From positions 1 through 64,000 of the IMG/VR virus record IMGVR_UViG_3300018424_000006: a DNA stretch of 64,000 bases. The stretch is one strand, 5' to 3'. Position 1 is the first letter of the stretch; the number at the start of each line of letters is the position of its first letter. Below, piece by piece: positions 9,316-24,056 of this stretch. Both the position numbers and the translations under genes were made by a program. The notes below the pieces were generated by a model. The model was not told the origin of the DNA. It worked only from the letters and a program-made list of their open reading frames with translations, and searched no databases.

Positions 9316-10266
9316 ATGAAACAATATATTGAACTCGGAAAACGCATTCTAGAAGAAGGCGTTATGGTCCGAAATGAACGAACTGGTAAAGGTTGCTTAA
9401 CCGTAATCAATGCCGATTTCGTTTATGATGTTGACGAAGGGAAGTTCCCTATGTTAACTACAAAGAAAGTCTATTGGAAAATGGCAATAGCTGAAGTACT
9501 TGGTTACATTAAAGGTTTTGATTCGGCAGAACAATTTCGTGAACTGGGCACGACTAGCTGGGACGCCAACGCCAATGCGGAAGTATGGCAGAAGAATCCT
9601 GCCTGTAAGGGTAAGGATGATATCGGTCTAGCCTATGGAGCAATTGCTCGTAATTTCCCAGTAGAGCCTGTTCCCGAACACGTAGCCATGAAGGCCTGGC
9701 AAGAAGCTCTTAACAGCCATTTGTATACCATCGAGGAACTAATGGCTATCCGTAAGTCATCCGAGCCGGGACAAACTATTGATCTAGTGCAGAAGGTTTA
9801 TGATGACCTACGTCAGGGTATCGATAACCGTTTTGAGACAATTACCTTCTTGCATCCGGGCGCTTTCCATTTGGCTTGTTTACGTCCGTGTATGTATGAA
9901 CACCAGTTCTCTATTCTAGATGGTACACTGTACTTAAATAGTACTCAGCGTTCAGTTGACGTACCACTCGGGCTCTGCTGGAATATGCTCCAGTGCTATT
10001 TCCTTCTAGCCGTAATGGCCCAGATTACTGGATTAAAGCCGGGCAAGGTTTACCATAAAATGGTAAATGTCCATATCTATGAAGATCAAATCGAACTCTT
10101 CAAAGAGCAGATGGCGCGTGAACCTATTGATGCCGATATTAAGTTCATCATCAATCCTGAAATTCAAACTCTTGACGATCTAATGGAGGCAACCCTTGAA
10201 GATTTCTCAGTTGAAGGATACGAAGGTAATCACCATCCTGCAATTGCATATCCATTCTCGGTTTGA
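9316..10266 (+). CDS. thyA: Thymidylate synthase (Vibrio/Pasteurellaceae-type)
   Basis: ERTG, catalytic [14 protein letters not shown] (dUMP-specific Asn), HIYEDQ, C-terminal YPFSV. Confidence 0.96.
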
Positions 10267-10278
10267 GGTATTTAGACG

Positions 10279-10695
10279 ATGAGTAACAACGAAGAAGCAG
10301 TAGCTGAAGCTACTATGGATGTTAACCACGATACCGTTGAAAAACTTTCGTTCCTAGAGCGTATCCGTAGACGGAAAGCATACTGGGCCGGCTCAACTAT
10401 CCCATGGTGGTTTCCGTGGCCAAACAAACACTTCACTCTCTATGGGAAAGAATGGACGTCCTATCAGGACTGGGAAATTCCATTTGAAGACCCTGGATGT
10501 ACTCCTGAGGTACAGATTAATTTCTATATTAATCGCCATAGCGGCTTCCATTTCTCGGTTCAGGTAAACGGCTATAGTCATGGCGGTCGTAATCCGATTC
10601 GCTTAGTAGTTAAGCAGCTACGAAGACTGGCTAATATCGATGCGTCTCTTGATGCTCTTAAAGGAGAGTGTCGTAGAGGCCAAAACCCTTATTAG
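10279..10695 (+). CDS. Hypothetical protein
   Basis: SD GAGGT; Trp-rich 138-aa ORF. Confidence 0.75.
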   Translation: MSNNEEAVAEATMDVNHDTVEKLSFLERIRRRKAYWAGSTIPWWFPWPNKHFTLYGKEWTSYQDWEIPFEDPGCTPEVQINFYINRHSGFHFSVQVNGYSHGGRNPIRLVVKQLRRLANIDASLDALKGECRRGQNPY

Positions 10696-10696
10696 T

Positions 10697-10747
10697 AAAA
10701 AAATAAATAAGGCTATACTCCCATTGGGAGTATAGCCTTTATGCCGT
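10697..10747. terminator. Bidirectional terminator with TGCCGT tail
   Basis: Stem AAGGCTATACTCCC/GGGAGTATAGCCTT at 10709-10739; A-run on the left; convergent genes. Confidence 0.85.
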
Positions 10748-10800
10748 TCTATATCTTAATAGTAGCTTTAGACTGGAGATCCAAATAAGTAAGTATCATT

Positions 10801-11157
10801 TTAAACTCCCTTTAATTTACCAAGTAACTTTTCAACAAGGTGCTTGCCATAGGTAGTCAAAAGAACAGCCTTTCGTGCATCGCCGCTATCAAGCTTACCG
10901 GATTTAGTTAAAGGAGACTTACCCAAATAAGTACCTCGTTGGTTATCCCTATGAGTCATCTGCATGAACTTAGCAGTTAGGTTTTTGGTAGGTAATCTAT
11001 CCTTATGCTTGTTAGCCATATCAGTTAATGATTCACCTTCATCAATAGCAAAGGTGGTTAAAGCAATTGCCTGATCGATCGTCTTAAAGTTTTGGTCCTT
11101 AAGACAGGTTAATGCGGAATGGAAACTTTCCAATTTCTTTTTATCTGCTAGTTTCAT
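10801..11157 (-). CDS. MarR-like winged-helix DNA-binding protein
   Basis: Wing motif 'DSGDARKAVLLTTYGKHLVEKL' matches MarR D.RR..V.LT..G..L; monocistronic under an early promoter. Confidence 0.65.
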   Translation of the reverse strand: MKLADKKKLESFHSALTCLKDQNFKTIDQAIALTTFAIDEGESLTDMANKHKDRLPTKNLTAKFMQMTHRDNQRGTYLGKSPLTKSGKLDSGDARKAVLLTTYGKHLVEKLLGKLKGV

Positions 11158-11204
11158 TTTTAGTATCCTTTTAAAAGGTAAATTATTTATTTACTCTCAT
11201 ATAA

Positions 11205-11229
11205 GTAATATAGAATCTAAAAGTTCTAT
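11205..11229 (-). promoter_or_regulatory. Putative early promoter TTCTATATTAC
   Basis: Plus strand reads GTAATATAGAATCTAAAAGTTCTAT; aligned with the other three copies. Confidence 0.75.
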
Positions 11230-11602
11230 GAAACAAAAAAACAAGTTCGATGGATCTTATCCAGAGGACCCCATTAAACTCCTCCCTATCAATTACCATA
11301 AGGAGATTGGACATGGTACTAGTTTAAAATCGACCTATGAGTCGTCGGCTATATTAGTGACGTCAACTATAGTACGTCAGCCGTGAAGACCTTTACAAAT
11401 ATCTCGTTTATATAAAGACTTTTAATAAAGTCTCAGATCTCGCACCTCCCGAATGATTACTCGTCTCTAATTTAGGGGCTGCAAATAACATGGCATGGAG
11501 TCAGTGATTACGAGAAGACCTCCCGGAACTATAAGTCCCAAGAAGAATACCGGTTACTTGCTTGGGTAGATAGTTCGAGGGAGGGCTTTACTTTTTTGCC
11601 GT
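11230..11602 (+). ncRNA. Candidate structured non-coding RNA / attenuator leader
   Basis: About 370 nt with no SD-led ORF. At least six stems, ending in a ~75-nt hairpin (11515-11588), a U-tract and TGCCGT. Starts at a TTCTATG late-type motif; three CCUCCC motifs. Confidence 0.5.
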
Positions 11603-11653
11603 CAAAATTTACAAATCGCCAAGATTATATATTAACGAATAGAGGTTTGGGCT

Positions 11654-13860
<2,207 letters not shown>

Positions 13861-13890
13861 AACTTTATCTATTAATGGAGAACCAACCTA

Positions 13891-14271
13891 ATGGAAACTG
13901 ATTTCCTACAATTTCAATACTTCAGGCTTAAAGGCTACGAAGATTTTCCCGATAAAACAATCTTTAAACCCATCGAATATAACGAAGACGGCAGCCTAAA
14001 AGTACTTTATCCAAATAAGGTAGACGGGACGTTAGAACTAACCCATCTGGAAAACCTTAGTCGGTACGAAGTTACTGCGCTGACTCAGGATGAAGTTACG
14101 GCCATTCAGACCAACTTACATTCAGCTTCAAAGAAAGCCCATCGAAAGTTGGTAGAGGCTAGAAGGCTATTTGAAAAGGCCCAGAACGAATTGAGCCTTT
14201 CTGGAGTGACTTCTCTTGACGAGAGTCAGAGTATTATTCTTGTTAACTTTAATGCAGGTATGTCGCTATGA
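13891..14271 (+). CDS. Hypothetical protein
   Basis: SD GGAG; ATGA overlap with the DHFR gene. Confidence 0.75.
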   Translation: METDFLQFQYFRLKGYEDFPDKTIFKPIEYNEDGSLKVLYPNKVDGTLELTHLENLSRYEVTALTQDEVTAIQTNLHSASKKAHRKLVEARRLFEKAQNELSLSGVTSLDESQSIILVNFNAGMSL

Positions 14272-14765
14272 AACTTTCTGCGATTGTAGCCTGTGACCAC
14301 AACGGCGGTATCGGTAAAGATAATACCTTGCCTTGGCATTTCAAAGAAGACTTTAAACACTTTGTAGCCGAGACCAAGGGCAAGACTGTACTGATGGGTC
14401 GTAAGACCTTTGAGTCTCTTCCTAGCGGTCCTTTACCTAATCGTCATAACGTAGTGGTAACTCGGGATACTTCTTTCAAGAATAAAGGCGTAGAGGTTGT
14501 ACATGACCTTGAAGGCTGGATAGAGTCTAAGAAAGAAACTGAGGACGAAATCATGGTTATTGGGGGCGCTGATATCTATCATCAGTTAGGTCCTAAGTTA
14601 GATGAGTTTATCATTACTCGTATCTTCCATGAATACGATTGTGATACCTTCTTGGATGTTAACCGCATGCGAGAACATCTTGACCACAGAAGTCAGAAGA
14701 CCCTTCCGCATCATCCGGGTGACCCGATGATCATCGTTAGTTATTATGGACACAGTTATATCTAA
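14268..14765 (+). CDS. folA: Dihydrofolate reductase
   Basis: IVA...GIG..N.LPW...D.KHF, MGRKTFES, LPNR.N.V, VIGGA.IY, CDTF. Confidence 0.96.
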   Translation: MKLSAIVACDHNGGIGKDNTLPWHFKEDFKHFVAETKGKTVLMGRKTFESLPSGPLPNRHNVVVTRDTSFKNKGVEVVHDLEGWIESKKETEDEIMVIGGADIYHQLGPKLDEFIITRIFHEYDCDTFLDVNRMREHLDHRSQKTLPHHPGDPMIIVSYYGHSYI

Positions 14766-15051
14766 CGCTAAGGAAGAATTGATTGCTCAGGGTTTAGATC
14801 CAGTAACGACCGTTGTTAATATTGCATTGGAGCCTCATGATGTCTATATAGGTAGACGAAGTAAATGGGGTAATCCATTTAAGACGGGAAGGGATGGAAC
14901 TAAGCAAGAAGTTATAGACCGTTATAGGCAAGAGATTCTTCCTACTTTAGCTCCTTACCTACACGAACTTGTAGGTAAGCGTTTAGGGTGTCACTGTAAG
15001 CCTGATGCTTGTCATGGAGATGTATTGGCTGAAGCCGTTAATTTAATATGA
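14746..15051 (+). CDS. DUF4326-family protein
   Basis: 'VYIGR.SKWGNPF...L.GK.LGCHC.P..CHGDVL' signature. Confidence 0.88.
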   Translation: MDTVISNAKEELIAQGLDPVTTVVNIALEPHDVYIGRRSKWGNPFKTGRDGTKQEVIDRYRQEILPTLAPYLHELVGKRLGCHCKPDACHGDVLAEAVNLI

Positions 15052-15086
15052 GGCCATGCGGGTAACCCGCATGGCCTTTATGCCGT
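15051..15086 (+). terminator. Terminator with TGCCGT tail
   Basis: Stem AGGCCATGCGGG-TAA-CCCGCATGGCCT, then TTATGCCGT. Confidence 0.8.
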
Positions 15087-15088
15087 CA

Positions 15089-15095
15089 TTCTATG
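15089..15095 (+). promoter_or_regulatory. Candidate late promoter (TTCTATG)
   Basis: TATG core as in phiKZ late promoters; the same heptamer occurs at 11224-11230 and 41777-41783. Confidence 0.4.
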
Positions 15096-19184: not shown

Positions 19185-19261
19185 TTTATATTCTCCATAT
19201 AAATATTTTTAAATTGAAACTCTACTATCGTTTTTATTATTAAGTTCCTCTATGCATGTAT

Positions 19262-19286
19262 GTAATATAGAACCTTATAGTTCTAG
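19262..19286 (-). promoter_or_regulatory. Putative early promoter CTAGAA-N8-TTCTATATTAC
   Basis: Plus strand reads GTAATATAGAACCTTATAGTTCTAG, directly after a terminator. Confidence 0.75.
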
Positions 19287-19289
19287 AAC

Positions 19290-19327
19290 ACGGCAAAAAA
19301 AAAGAATCCCGATTAAGGGATTCTTTT
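19290..19327 (-). terminator. Intrinsic terminator with TGCCGT tail
   Basis: AAAAGAATCCC/GGGATTCTTTT stem, U9 tract, then GCCGT on the minus strand. Confidence 0.85.
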
Positions 19328-23906: not shown

Positions 23907-23968
23907 TATTTCAATCCCTTTATTTTAAGCTAAAAGGATAAATTATTTATTTATCCCATCTCATTAAA

Positions 23969-23993
23969 ATAATATAGAATTGTAATTTCCTAG
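23969..23993 (-). promoter_or_regulatory. Putative early promoter CTAGGA-N8-TTCTATATTAT
   Basis: One mismatch to the TATATTAC core; same upstream CTAG spacing as the other copies. Confidence 0.65.
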
Positions 23994-24056
23994 AATAGGA
24001 TAAATTTACATTTAGGTTTTATTGCATGAATCTAACTATTACGATTGGAGTAATAA

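What the first reader, a model, noticed from the sequence alone, without database searches (positions are those of the whole stretch)
11230..11602. Candidate novel phage ncRNA/attenuator with three anti-Shine-Dalgarno CCUCCC motifs and a switchable terminal hairpin
This is the largest intergenic gap in the window and it is densely paired. Stems: 11251-11263; 11275-80/11321-26 enclosing 11294-99/11313-18; 11331-44; 11346-50/11379-83 enclosing 11358-63/11374-79; 11416-33; and a long hairpin CCUCCC(11519)-GAACUAU-CCCAAG...CUUGGG-AUAGUUC-GGGAGG(11584), followed by a U-tract and the phage's TGCCGT end motif. CCUCCC occurs at 11281, 11445 (CACCUCC, as in the 16S 3' end) and 11519. The 11445 CCUCCCGAA copy can compete with 11519 for UUCGAGGGAGG, giving two alternative folds. 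Inference: a late sRNA that could mask GGGAG-type SD sites (used by several early genes here), or an attenuator for the ligA-DHFR operon.
Basis: partly seen in the sequence, partly recalled or inferred. Interest (0 to 1): 0.72.

Follow-up and report, generated by a model that had tools for sequence, protein, structure and literature searches.

The report
Abundant 311-nt jumbo-phage non-coding RNA
The largest gap between genes in this stretch of an uncultured, nucleus-forming jumbo phage makes a discrete, highly abundant RNA of about 311 nt that codes for no protein, matches no known RNA family and ends at the phage's own type of terminator; what it does is still unknown.

Summary
Public data add the missing evidence. 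In three independent salt-marsh metatranscriptomes, one contig covers exactly 11273-11583/4 at word depth 28-49. Every flanking gene has depth 0-5, and depth is zero immediately on both sides.

The genome is a 219.8-kb phiKZ-like (chimallivirus) phage. The gap holds three things:
- An early-type promoter at 11195-11238 on the minus strand, one of 23 copies that all point the same way. It drives the neighbouring 118-aa gene.
- The RNA itself.
- A phiKZ-type terminator on the plus strand: a long hairpin at 11515-11588 (z -5.1), a U-tract, then TGCCGT.

It has 38 intergenic copies here against 4.8 expected.

CCTCCC occurs 9 times on the plus strand of the whole genome, and 3 of those lie inside this RNA. 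That is the most improbable hexamer triple in the genome.

Several tests gave nothing:
- Overall folding is no better than shuffled sequence.
- There is no Rfam match.
- No usable ORF lies within the RNA.
- No homologue or sequence variant exists anywhere searched, so covariation cannot be tested.

I think it most likely belongs with the leader or intergenic ncRNAs already described for phiKZ and 201phi2-1. The anti-Shine-Dalgarno and attenuator mechanisms remain untested and weakly supported.

The parts
10801..11157 (-). 118-aa orphan gene, divergent from the RNA and driven by the early-type promoter
   Evidence: ORF. No Pfam or PHROG family. The only homologue is a 99%-identical copy of itself. 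Low RNA depth of 0-3.
11195..11238 (-). Early-type (virion RNA polymerase) promoter, core TCTATATTAC, serving gene 10801-11157
   Evidence: A PWM scan finds 23 strong copies, all in the minus orientation. In 22 of them a minus-strand gene starts 5-77 nt downstream. This copy scores 34.1 and lies 38 nt from the start codon. It matches the AT-rich motif centred at -10 that is described for RNAP-encoding jumbo phages (PMC7598289).
11228..11386 (+). 52-codon ORF; probably not a gene
   Evidence: Its ATG lies inside the early promoter and 45 nt upstream of the 5' end of the RNA. There is no SD. It has no homologue other than itself among 1.84 billion representatives and no family.
11233..11272 (-). 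Terminator-like element on the minus strand: hairpin 11245-11269, then TTGTTTTTTTGT
   Evidence: The tail fits the pattern TT[AT]T[GT][CT][CT]GT, with dG -12.9 upstream. The hairpin has z -2.29. It abuts the 5' end of the RNA, and RNA depth over it is zero. Its role is unexplained.
11273..11583 (+). The abundant non-coding RNA of about 311 nt
   Evidence: Contigs cover 11273-11583 (X3, X5) and 11273-11584 (X4) at word depth 47.7, 28.2 and 49. Flanks are at 0-5. X6 has two pieces inside the same interval. The share of sampled words is 0.73 for 11200-11640 against 0.22-0.52 for 10700-12000. In X3 an Illumina adapter follows 11583 directly. No ORF longer than 24 aa lies wholly inside it.
11281..11286 (+). 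CCUCCC copy 1
   Evidence: Mean unpaired probability of the surrounding 14 nt is 0.44. It is the best alternative partner of the 3' GGGAGG when the native arm is blocked.
11416..11433 (+). 7-bp hairpin AGACUUU/AAAGUCU with loop UAAU
   Evidence: dG -6.1, z -2.95, matched or beaten by 4 of 200 shuffles.
11445..11450 (+). CCUCCC copy 2, in the context CACCUCC
   Evidence: In the minimum-energy fold it pairs with GGGG at 11475-11478. Its duplex with the 3' arm is -17.7 kcal/mol.
11515..11588 (+). Long 3' hairpin. Its base, CCUCCC (copy 3, 11519-11524) paired with GGGAGG (11579-11584), resembles the phiKZ terminator stem; the upper part is an extension of about 50 nt
   Evidence: dG -32.5, z -5.10, 0 of 200 shuffles. 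The published phiKZ consensus stem is CCYCCCC...GGGRRGG (PMC10914365, read).
11590..11602 (+). U-tract plus TGCCGT: the terminator tail
   Evidence: TT[AT]T[GT][CT][CT]GT occurs 63 times, 38 of them intergenic against 4.8 expected. Of those 38, 29 have an upstream hairpin of -13 kcal/mol or stronger, and 32 are co-oriented with the gene upstream. It corresponds to the phiKZ motif ...YTTATKYYGT.
11654..15051 (+). Downstream co-oriented operon: 70-aa ORF, NAD-dependent DNA ligase (11866-13842), 126-aa ORF, DHFR (14268-14765) and a 101-aa ORF. It ends at a phiKZ-type terminator at 15055-15086
   Evidence: RNA depth is 0-3. One X3 contig starts at 11647.

Best explanation
The gap encodes a discrete, stable, very abundant non-coding RNA of about 311 nt (11273-11583, plus strand) in a phiKZ-like nucleus-forming jumbo phage. 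Plus-strand transcription that starts at or upstream of 11273 runs into a phiKZ-type intrinsic terminator. That terminator is a CCUCCC/GGGAGG stem carrying an unusually long extension, followed by a U-tract and TGCCGT. Most polymerases stop there. The product is trimmed back to the base of the strong stem, at 11583/4, and the 3' hairpin protects it, so it accumulates about 10-fold above neighbouring mRNAs. By position it belongs to the class of jumbo-phage ncRNAs produced by termination just upstream of an operon, here the 70-aa ORF, ligA and DHFR. My preferred reading is that it is a leader-type or insulating transcription unit. On that reading, its terminator limits how much transcription enters the nucleotide-metabolism and ligase operon, and the stable RNA may in addition act in trans. 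What is shown: the RNA's existence, its ends, its abundance, the absence of coding capacity, and the identity of the terminator. What is inferred: the strand, the 3' trimming, the origin of the 5' end (a transcription start or an endonuclease cut in the sequence CC/AUUAAAC), and any regulatory role.
For: Existence and ends: identical contig ends in X3, X4 and X5 at depth 28-49, with 0-5 in the flanks, zero depth over 11042-11272 in all four runs and over 11585-11646 in X3 (to about 12100 or further in X4-X6), no sequence differences and no joints. Strand (three lines): (1) the phage's standard terminator tail follows the hairpin on the plus strand; (2) the plus-strand RNA ends flush with a hairpin of z -5.1, as expected for a 3' end protected from exonucleases; (3) the adapter joined after 11583 is the read-2 read-through type, and read 2 is the sense read in dUTP-stranded libraries (the library type is assumed). 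Non-coding. Phage type: RNAP beta-like subunits, a nuclear shell protein and a phiKZ-type major head protein. Precedent: 17 ncRNA candidates in phiKZ and 11 sRNAs in 201phi2-1, mostly derived from 5'UTRs by premature termination (PMC10914365, PMC11512511). No early-promoter copy and no TATGTAT late-type motif lies between the terminator and the 70-aa ORF. Read-through is therefore a plausible source of operon transcription.
Against: No promoter could be assigned to the 5' end at 11273. No motif recurs upstream of it. The nearest TATG (11227-11230) is 43 nt upstream and lacks the enriched TATGTAT form. No RNA contig bridges the terminator into the operon, and one low-depth contig starts at 11647. 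An AT-rich stretch centred about 24 nt upstream of 11647 could be a separate middle-type promoter. At 311 nt it is longer than the jumbo-phage sRNAs described so far (under 250 nt). Contigs carry no strand information, and the strand argument from the adapter rests on an assumed library protocol. No homologue or variant exists, so nothing shows that the structure or the motifs are under selection.
Confidence: 0.45

Rival explanations
1. A trans-acting riboregulator that uses its C-rich CCUCCC motifs, which resemble the anti-Shine-Dalgarno sequence, to pair with G-rich ribosome-binding sites (GGGAGG or GGAGG) of host or phage mRNAs and block translation initiation.
For: Three of the nine CCTCCC copies on the genome's plus strand lie in this RNA, the top hexamer-triple outlier in the genome. 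One copy reads CACCUCC, as in the 3' end of 16S rRNA (the 16S sequence is from general knowledge). The RNA is about 10-fold more abundant than neighbouring mRNAs, as a stoichiometric competitor would need to be. C-rich regions that pair with SD sequences are an established sRNA mechanism (RoxS; PMC8216469, which I listed but did not read).
Against: Copy 3 is buried in the terminator stem, with unpaired probability about 0.1. Copies 1 and 2 are about 44% unpaired on average, and each has a G-rich partner nearby within the RNA. Duplex energies with 222 phage translation-initiation regions (mean -19.5) are no better than with coding-region controls (mean -22.2). Only 2 of 222 phage genes have GGGAGG in their SD region and 14 have GGGAG. 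C-rich 5' arms belong to the phiKZ-type terminator consensus, so the motif may have a structural rather than a targeting origin. The host is unknown, so host targets could not be examined.
Confidence: 0.2
2. A conditional attenuator. The single G-rich 3' arm (UUCGAGGGAGG) can pair with any of the three CCUCCC copies, and a factor or signal that shifts the pairing decides between termination and read-through into ligA-DHFR.
For: Alternative duplexes do exist: -14.7 kcal/mol for copy 1 and -17.7 for copy 2. The RNA sits directly upstream of a co-oriented operon. Antitermination has been proposed for 201phi2-1 (PMC11512511).
Against: The native hairpin is far stronger (-32.5 kcal/mol). Blocking its 5' arm costs about 16 kcal/mol. 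The alternatives pair with the 3' arm, so they recreate the same CCUCCC/GGGAGG helix next to the U-tract. That is not how an antiterminator works, because an antiterminator has to sequester one arm of the terminator. There is no riboswitch or leader family in Rfam, no leader peptide with an SD, and no read-through contig.
Confidence: 0.12
3. The RNA is the minus strand (11583 to 11273). It would then carry three GGGAGG SD-like sites without ORFs and could act as a decoy for 30S subunits or the anti-SD.
For: Logan contigs have no direction. A terminator-like hairpin plus T-run lies on the minus strand just beyond 11273. Whole-RNA folding is slightly better on the minus strand (z -1.47 against -0.94).
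Against: A minus-strand RNA would end 3 nt before that hairpin and so lack a protected 3' end, and depth over the hairpin is zero. There is no promoter motif upstream of 11584 on the minus strand. The adapter type at 11583 fits a plus-strand 3' end in a dUTP library. The phage's terminator tail follows the hairpin on the plus strand.
Confidence: 0.1
4. A protein-binding or structural RNA, such as a sponge or scaffold for a phage or host protein, unrelated to SD pairing or to the operon downstream.
For: High abundance and defined ends. A long irregular 3' hairpin unlike the phage's short perfect terminator stems.
Against: There are no repeated loop motifs of a known sponge type: only 5 GGA in 311 nt. 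Global folding is not exceptional. No partner gene is evident, because the neighbours are orphans or metabolic enzymes.
Confidence: 0.1
5. It is not an RNA gene: either an mRNA for a small protein, an excised intron, or an artefact of DNA contamination or assembly.
For: An ORF of 52 codons overlaps the region and my crude codon-usage caller accepted it, with a score of 7.4. The genome does contain two group I introns. One of the contigs is chimeric at its 5' side.
Against: The ORF starts 45 nt upstream of the RNA, has no SD and has no homologue. Rfam finds the two real introns but nothing here. There are no joints in the reads, the base before 11273 is C rather than the usual U, and there are no credible exons. 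DNA contamination cannot produce a 10-fold step with identical ends in three libraries.
Confidence: 0.03

Closest known systems
ncRNA/sRNA candidates of phiKZ (17 derived from 5'UTRs) and 201phi2-1 (11; 3 intergenic, 8 derived from 5'UTRs) found by ONT-cappable-seq (PMC10914365, PMC11512511)
   Same: Same kind of phage, with two multisubunit RNAPs and a nuclear shell protein. A short discrete transcript is made when a terminator follows a transcription start just upstream of a gene. There is no ORF with an SD. The same conserved terminator type is used. Function is unknown in those cases too.
   Different: No sequence similarity to any deposited phage. At 311 nt it is longer than the under-250-nt set. 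A primary transcription start has not been shown. It is known only from environmental metatranscriptomes of an uncultured phage. It carries a triple CCUCCC motif.
phiKZ conserved intrinsic terminator, 5'-BCCYCCCCHWWDGGGRRGGBYTTATKYYGT-3' (PMC10914365)
   Same: C-rich 5' arm and G-rich 3' arm (CCUCCC/GGGAGG). A T-rich tract followed by K-Y-Y-G-T (here TTTTGCCGT). The motif is strongly enriched in intergenic DNA downstream of co-oriented genes.
   Different: The loop is replaced by an extension helix of about 50 nt. Seven extra bases (GCTTTAC) separate the strong stem from the T-run. The tail reads TTTT rather than TTAT, as it also does at 19290, 46983 and 168866.
C-rich-motif sRNAs that pair with Shine-Dalgarno sequences (RsaE/RoxS of Firmicutes; UCCC motifs of S. 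aureus sRNAs)
   Same: Several C-rich motifs complementary to G-rich ribosome-binding sites, carried on an abundant, terminator-ended RNA.
   Different: Those RNAs are about 100 nt long and display the motifs in unpaired loops. Here exposure is only partial, one copy is part of the terminator, no targets were found, and there is no homology.
Processed stable phage RNAs of unknown or regulatory function (PAK_P3 ncRNA1/2; T4 'species 1 and 2' RNAs; P1 c4 and P4 CI RNAs)
   Same: Abundant phage RNAs with sharply defined ends that can arise by processing rather than at a primary transcription start.
   Different: No sequence or structural relation.

Membership tests
phiKZ-type intrinsic terminator (stem-loop + TTATKYYGT) | T-rich tract followed by K-Y-Y-G-T immediately 3' of a hairpin | tested here: met
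   TTTTGCCGT at 11594-11602. The pattern has 38 intergenic copies against 4.8 expected, and 29 of them follow a hairpin of -13 kcal/mol or stronger. The consensus was read.
phiKZ-type intrinsic terminator (stem-loop + TTATKYYGT) | Short stem with a C-rich 5' arm and a G-rich 3' arm, closed by a loop of about 4 nt | tested here: inconclusive
   The base of the stem is CCUCCC/GGGAGG, as in the consensus. The 'loop', however, is a 54-nt extension helix, and 7 nt separate the strong stem from the T-run.
phiKZ-type intrinsic terminator (stem-loop + TTATKYYGT) | The transcript's 3' end maps at the element | tested here: met
   RNA contigs end at 11583/4, and depth is zero beyond that point until 11647. 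The end lies at the base of the stem rather than in the T-run, so 3' trimming is inferred.
Jumbo-phage 5'UTR-derived / intergenic ncRNAs (phiKZ, 201phi2-1) | Discrete short transcript enriched over its surroundings | tested here: met
   Depth 28-49 against 0-5, with identical ends in three runs.
Jumbo-phage 5'UTR-derived / intergenic ncRNAs (phiKZ, 201phi2-1) | A primary transcription start with a promoter, followed closely by a termination site upstream of a gene | not testable with these tools
   The chemistry of the 5' end is unknown. No promoter motif lies upstream of 11273. The termination site is present.
Jumbo-phage 5'UTR-derived / intergenic ncRNAs (phiKZ, 201phi2-1) | No ORF of 10 aa or more preceded by an SD | tested here: met
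   Six-frame translation. The longest internal ORF is 24 aa and has no SD. The 52-aa ORF starts outside the RNA.
Jumbo-phage 5'UTR-derived / intergenic ncRNAs (phiKZ, 201phi2-1) | Sequence conservation in related phages at the equivalent locus | tested here: not met
   No DNA match among 50,697 phage records. The nearest cultured relative, Vibrio phage Yong XC31 (major head protein 38% identical), has no gap upstream of ligA. So this is an analogue of those ncRNAs, not a homologue.
C-rich anti-SD sRNAs (RsaE/RoxS type) | Multiple C-rich motifs | tested here: met
   Three CCUCCC copies, P 3.4e-7.
C-rich anti-SD sRNAs (RsaE/RoxS type) | Motifs exposed in single-stranded loops | tested here: inconclusive
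   Mean unpaired probability is 0.44, 0.44 and 0.36. Copy 3 is paired within the terminator stem. This is prediction only.
C-rich anti-SD sRNAs (RsaE/RoxS type) | Preferential pairing with the ribosome-binding sites of target mRNAs | tested here: not met
   Phage translation-initiation regions pair no better than coding-region controls. Host targets cannot be tested because the host is unknown.
Transcription attenuator / riboswitch | Mutually exclusive terminator and antiterminator of comparable stability, or a known aptamer | tested here: not met
   The alternative folds are about 16 kcal/mol worse, and they pair with the 3' arm, which rebuilds the same helix. No Rfam family appears even at E up to 10.
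Group I intron | Match to the catalytic core (Rfam RF00028), flanking exons, and spliced reads | tested here: not met
   No hit here, whereas two introns elsewhere in the genome score 74-83 bits. There are no joints in the RNA contigs, and the locus lies between divergent genes.
tRNA / tmRNA / any Rfam family | Covariance-model or ARAGORN match | tested here: not met

The most novel reading that the evidence does not exclude
A nucleus-forming jumbo phage makes a very abundant RNA that displays several copies of the ribosome's own anti-Shine-Dalgarno sequence. The RNA acts as a competitor that titrates strong GGGAGG-type ribosome-binding sites, so that host or early phage mRNAs are translated less and the cell's translation capacity is redirected. 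That would be an RNA-based takeover of translation initiation. A variant of the idea is that the same C-rich motifs pair in trans with the G-rich arms of the phage's CUCCC/GGGAG terminators and modulate termination across the genome.
Probability: 0.1. Interest if true: 0.8.

Novelty: new member of a known kind. Interest (0 to 1): 0.5.

Why it matters
Small and non-coding RNAs of nucleus-forming jumbo phages have been catalogued only recently, in phiKZ and 201phi2-1, and none has a known function. This example is about ten times more abundant than its neighbouring genes in natural salt-marsh communities. It has exact ends and belongs to a lineage with no cultured relative, the nearest major head protein being 38% identical. 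It also shows that the phiKZ terminator signature (stem plus TTATKYYGT) and the one-orientation early promoter architecture extend to a very distant marine member of the group. Those signals can therefore be used to annotate transcription units in uncultured chimalliviruses. If the triple anti-SD motif turns out to be functional, it would be a new way for a phage to interfere with translation initiation. If it does not, the locus is still a clean, well-delimited model for how these phages make and stabilise ncRNAs.

Tried and rejected
- **Rfam.** Gathering thresholds on the window and on 140 kb of the remaining genome, plus permissive searches of 901 and 336 nt around the RNA, gave nothing at the locus.
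- **tRNA and tmRNA.** None anywhere in the genome.
- **Homologues for a covariation test.**
  - DNA searches of 50,697 phage records, near and distant modes, found nothing.
  - IMG/VR scans with the ligase and with the major head protein returned only an identical copy of this phage.
  - A search of 5.8 billion proteins with the ligase gave at best 46% identity, to marine Gammaproteobacteria. The same search with the 118-aa neighbour returned only a copy of itself.
  - The ENA contig L009 and the JGI contig L019 are 100% identical across the locus.
  - Covariation and R-scape-type tests are therefore impossible at present.
- **Positional conservation.** There is no gap upstream of ligA in Vibrio phage Yong XC31.
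- **Coding hypothesis for the 52-aa ORF.** Rejected.
- **Sigma-70 promoter scan.** Nothing at the locus. It is irrelevant in any case once the phage is recognised as one that encodes its own RNA polymerases.
- **A recurring motif upstream of 11273.** None found.
- **Target search.** I used RNAduplex against all phage translation-initiation regions and saw no enrichment over coding-region controls. One outlier, the initiation region of 168025-168495 at -39.8 kcal/mol, has large internal loops and was not pursued. The first attempt timed out.
- **Base skews as a strand indicator.** Uninformative.
- **The 85 foreign letters before 11273 in the X4 contig.** They are not from this phage, so the contig is chimeric and the junction is not a splice.
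- **dsRNA reading.** Both strands forming a 311-bp duplex is unlikely, because only a single adapter type was assembled at 11583.
- **Read laying.** It was busy once and succeeded on the repeat. It is capped at one call, so I could neither calibrate library strandedness on known genes nor compare depth with, for example, the capsid gene.
Full report
**Where the finding lies.** The window is the first 64 kb of a 219,819-bp virus record with direct terminal repeats. PHROG matches identify a phiKZ-like, nucleus-forming jumbo phage (chimallivirus). They include three RNA-polymerase beta-type subunits, a nuclear shell protein, a phiKZ-type major head protein, a tail sheath and a DNA polymerase.

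The nearest cultured relatives are Vibrio phages of the Yong group, with only 38% identity in the major head protein. The ligase next to the finding has no relative above 46% identity among 5.8 billion proteins.

The finding lies in a 496-bp gap, 11158-11653. On its left is a minus-strand 118-aa orphan gene (10801-11157). On its right is a plus-strand operon: a 70-aa ORF, NAD-dependent DNA ligase, a 126-aa ORF and DHFR. It is the largest gap in the window.

**Checking the observation.** All the listed stems are complementary at, or within one base of, the stated coordinates. The three CCTCCC copies (11281, 11445, 11519), the long hairpin, the T-run and TGCCGT are all there.

Against shuffled controls, only part of this stands out:
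- The terminal hairpin 11515-11588 has dG -32.5 and z -5.1, and no shuffle out of 200 folds as well.
- The 7-bp hairpin 11416-11433 has z -2.95.
- The other stems, and the region as a whole, fold no better than chance. The z values range from -0.8 to -1.7, and one segment gives +0.5.

The motif claim holds up better. CCTCCC occurs only nine times on the plus strand of the entire genome, and three of those are here. This is the most improbable triple of any hexamer in the genome (P 3.4e-7, rank 1 of 1583; the next best is 1.9e-6).

**RNA evidence.** Public salt-marsh metatranscriptomes contain this phage. For 11200-11640 the share of sampled words held is 0.73, 0.73, 0.73, 0.63 and 0.44 in five RNA runs. 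For the wider interval 10700-12000 it is only 0.52, 0.32, 0.22, 0.19 and 0.13, so the RNA signal is concentrated in the gap.

Laying the contigs of four runs on 10000-13000 gave the following:
- X3 has one contig covering exactly 11273-11583 at word depth 47.7.
- X4 has one covering 11273-11584 at depth 49.
- X5 has one covering 11273-11583 at depth 28.2.
- X6 has two pieces, 11300-11450 and 11422-11579.
- All flanking genes are at depth 0-5.
- Depth is zero over 11042-11272 in all four runs; to the right it is zero from 11585 to 11646 in X3 and to about 12100 or further in X4-X6.
- There are no base differences, indels or joints.

In X3 the contig continues after 11583 straight into an Illumina adapter, so many inserts ended exactly there. 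In X4, 85 foreign letters precede 11273. They are not from this phage, so that contig is chimeric.

A discrete transcript exists, but it is 311 nt (11273-11583) rather than about 370 nt.

**What flanks the RNA.** The left 40 nt of the gap are a promoter for the divergent gene. A motif of about 45 nt with the core TCTATATTAC has 23 strong copies in the genome, all in the minus orientation. In 22 of them a minus-strand gene starts 5-77 nt downstream. The copy at 11195-11238 lies 38 nt from the start of 10801-11157. This fits the AT-rich motif centred at -10 that marks early, virion-RNAP promoters in every RNAP-encoding jumbo phage (PMC7598289).

On the right, the "TGCCGT end motif" is the tail of the phage's standard terminator. 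The pattern TT[AT]T[GT][CT][CT]GT occurs 63 times, 38 of them in the 7.6% of the genome that is intergenic (4.8 expected). Of those 38 copies, 29 follow a hairpin of -13 kcal/mol or stronger, and 32 are co-oriented with the gene upstream.

It is the same signal as the conserved phiKZ terminator, 5'-BCCYCCCCHWWDGGGRRGGBYTTATKYYGT-3' (PMC10914365). The base of the RNA's 3' hairpin, CCUCCC/GGGAGG, also matches the C-rich/G-rich stem of that consensus. The hairpin looks like a phiKZ-type terminator whose loop has been replaced by a helix of about 50 nt.

**Strand.** Contigs carry no direction, so the strand is inferred. Three lines agree on plus:
- The phage-typical terminator tail follows the hairpin on the plus strand.
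- The plus-strand RNA ends flush with a very stable hairpin, as a 3' end protected from exonucleases should. A minus-strand RNA would instead stop 3 nt short of the weak hairpin at 11245-11269, and depth over that hairpin is zero.
- The adapter assembled after 11583 is the read-2 read-through type, which marks the 3' end of a sense RNA in dUTP-stranded libraries. The library type is my assumption.

A terminator-like element on the minus strand at 11233-11272 (hairpin plus TTGTTTTTTTGT) remains unexplained.

**The 5' end.** No promoter could be assigned to 11273. There is no early-promoter copy on the plus strand and no recurring motif upstream.

The likely late-type motif of this phage is TATGTAT. 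It has 12 intergenic copies against 3.4 expected, and 10 of the 12 lie 12-96 nt upstream of a co-oriented gene. That fits the phiKZ late signal T(-3)ATG(+1). It is absent here. Only a plain TATG sits at 11227-11230, 43 nt upstream of the RNA.

The end is therefore either an unrecognised (middle-type?) transcription start or an endonucleolytic cut in the sequence CC/AUUAAAC.

**Coding and family tests.** No ORF longer than 24 aa lies within the RNA on either strand. The 52-codon ORF starts inside the early promoter, 45 nt before the RNA. It has no SD, no family and no homologue other than itself among 1.84 billion representatives.

Rfam gives nothing even at E up to 10. It does detect two genuine group I introns elsewhere in the genome, so an intron here would very likely have been seen. 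No spliced reads exist either.

**Mechanism.** What is shown is a stable, abundant, non-coding RNA that ends at a phiKZ-type terminator immediately upstream of a co-oriented operon. This is the anatomy of the ncRNA candidates described in phiKZ (17, derived from 5'UTRs by premature termination) and in 201phi2-1 (11 sRNAs). I place it in that class by analogy, not by homology.

My preferred reading is that the terminator stops more than 90% of transcription, the product is trimmed to the stem base and accumulates, and any read-through feeds the ligA-DHFR operon. No recognisable promoter lies between the terminator and that operon. Against this reading, no contig bridges the terminator, and one low-depth contig starts at 11647, downstream of an AT-rich stretch that could be a separate promoter.

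- **Anti-SD masking.** The motif statistics are striking, but copy 3 is part of the terminator stem. Copies 1 and 2 are only about 44% unpaired in the predicted ensemble, and each has a G-rich partner nearby. Phage translation-initiation regions pair no better than coding-region controls. GGGAG-type SDs are rare, in 14 of 222 genes, and I did not test whether early genes carry them more often.
- **Attenuator.** The alternative pairings are real (-14.7 and -17.7 kcal/mol). But they engage the 3' arm, so they rebuild the same helix beside the U-tract. Blocking the native arm costs about 16 kcal/mol.

**Limits.** Every other copy of this phage that was found is 100% identical across the locus (L007, L009, L019), and no relative carries anything similar. 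Covariation, the strongest computational test of a structured RNA, therefore cannot be done now. Expression timing, 5'-end chemistry, the host and any trans targets are all unknown.

**Verdict.** This is a real and well-delimited new ncRNA of a known kind, in a very divergent uncultured chimallivirus.

Noticed in passing
genome-wide; in the window at 1918-1961, 11195-11238, 19252-19295 and 23959-24002 (all minus orientation): An early-type promoter motif (..GTGTTCTAGAA..N..TTCTATATTAC.TTAATGAG) has 23 strong copies, every one in the minus orientation. In 22 of them a minus-strand gene starts 5-77 nt downstream. The part upstream of the AT-rich core often contains an inverted repeat (TAGAA..TTCTA).
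   Followed up: partly
genome-wide; in the window at 10709-10747(+), 15055-15086(+), 15479(+), 19290(-) and 46983(+): The phiKZ terminator signature (hairpin + TTATKYYGT) is conserved in this very distant marine relative: 38 intergenic copies against 4.8 expected. Several are bidirectional, with TTTATTTTTTTGT on the opposite strand.
   Followed up: partly
L014:3794-4126 (-) = genome 147794-148126; L016:6713-7078 (-) = genome 190713-191078: Two group I introns (Rfam RF00028, 74 and 83 bits) lie in two of the largest apparent gaps of the genome. The interrupted genes were not identified.
   Followed up: no
genome-wide; in the window at 15092: TATGTAT is 3.5-fold enriched in intergenic DNA, and 10 of its 12 intergenic copies lie 12-96 nt upstream of a co-oriented gene. 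It is probably this phage's extended version of the phiKZ late promoter TATG(+1).
   Followed up: partly
window 11233-11272 (-): A hairpin (11245-11269) plus TTGTTTTTTTGT on the minus strand looks like a weak phage-type terminator pointing into the early promoter. It has no obvious minus-strand transcript to terminate, and it abuts the 5' end of the RNA.
   Followed up: partly
whole genome (G000): There are no tRNA or tmRNA genes in a 220-kb jumbo phage. The adjacent 118-aa gene has no homologue other than itself, and the 138-aa, 126-aa and 70-aa neighbours match no Pfam or PHROG family. The ligase is closest, at 46%, to ligases of marine Gammaproteobacteria (Kangiella, Spongiibacter) rather than to phage ligases.
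   Followed up: no
genome 168025-168495 (-), translation-initiation region: This is the single outlier in the duplex scan with the RNA, at -39.8 kcal/mol against a control minimum of -34.8. The predicted duplex has large internal loops, and the gene start comes from my crude gene caller.
   Followed up: no
window 10050-10089: In two RNA runs, contigs from other organisms share a 40-nt stretch (4 mismatches) with the 3' part of the phage thymidylate synthase gene. This is presumably a conserved ThyA segment from other community members.
   Followed up: no
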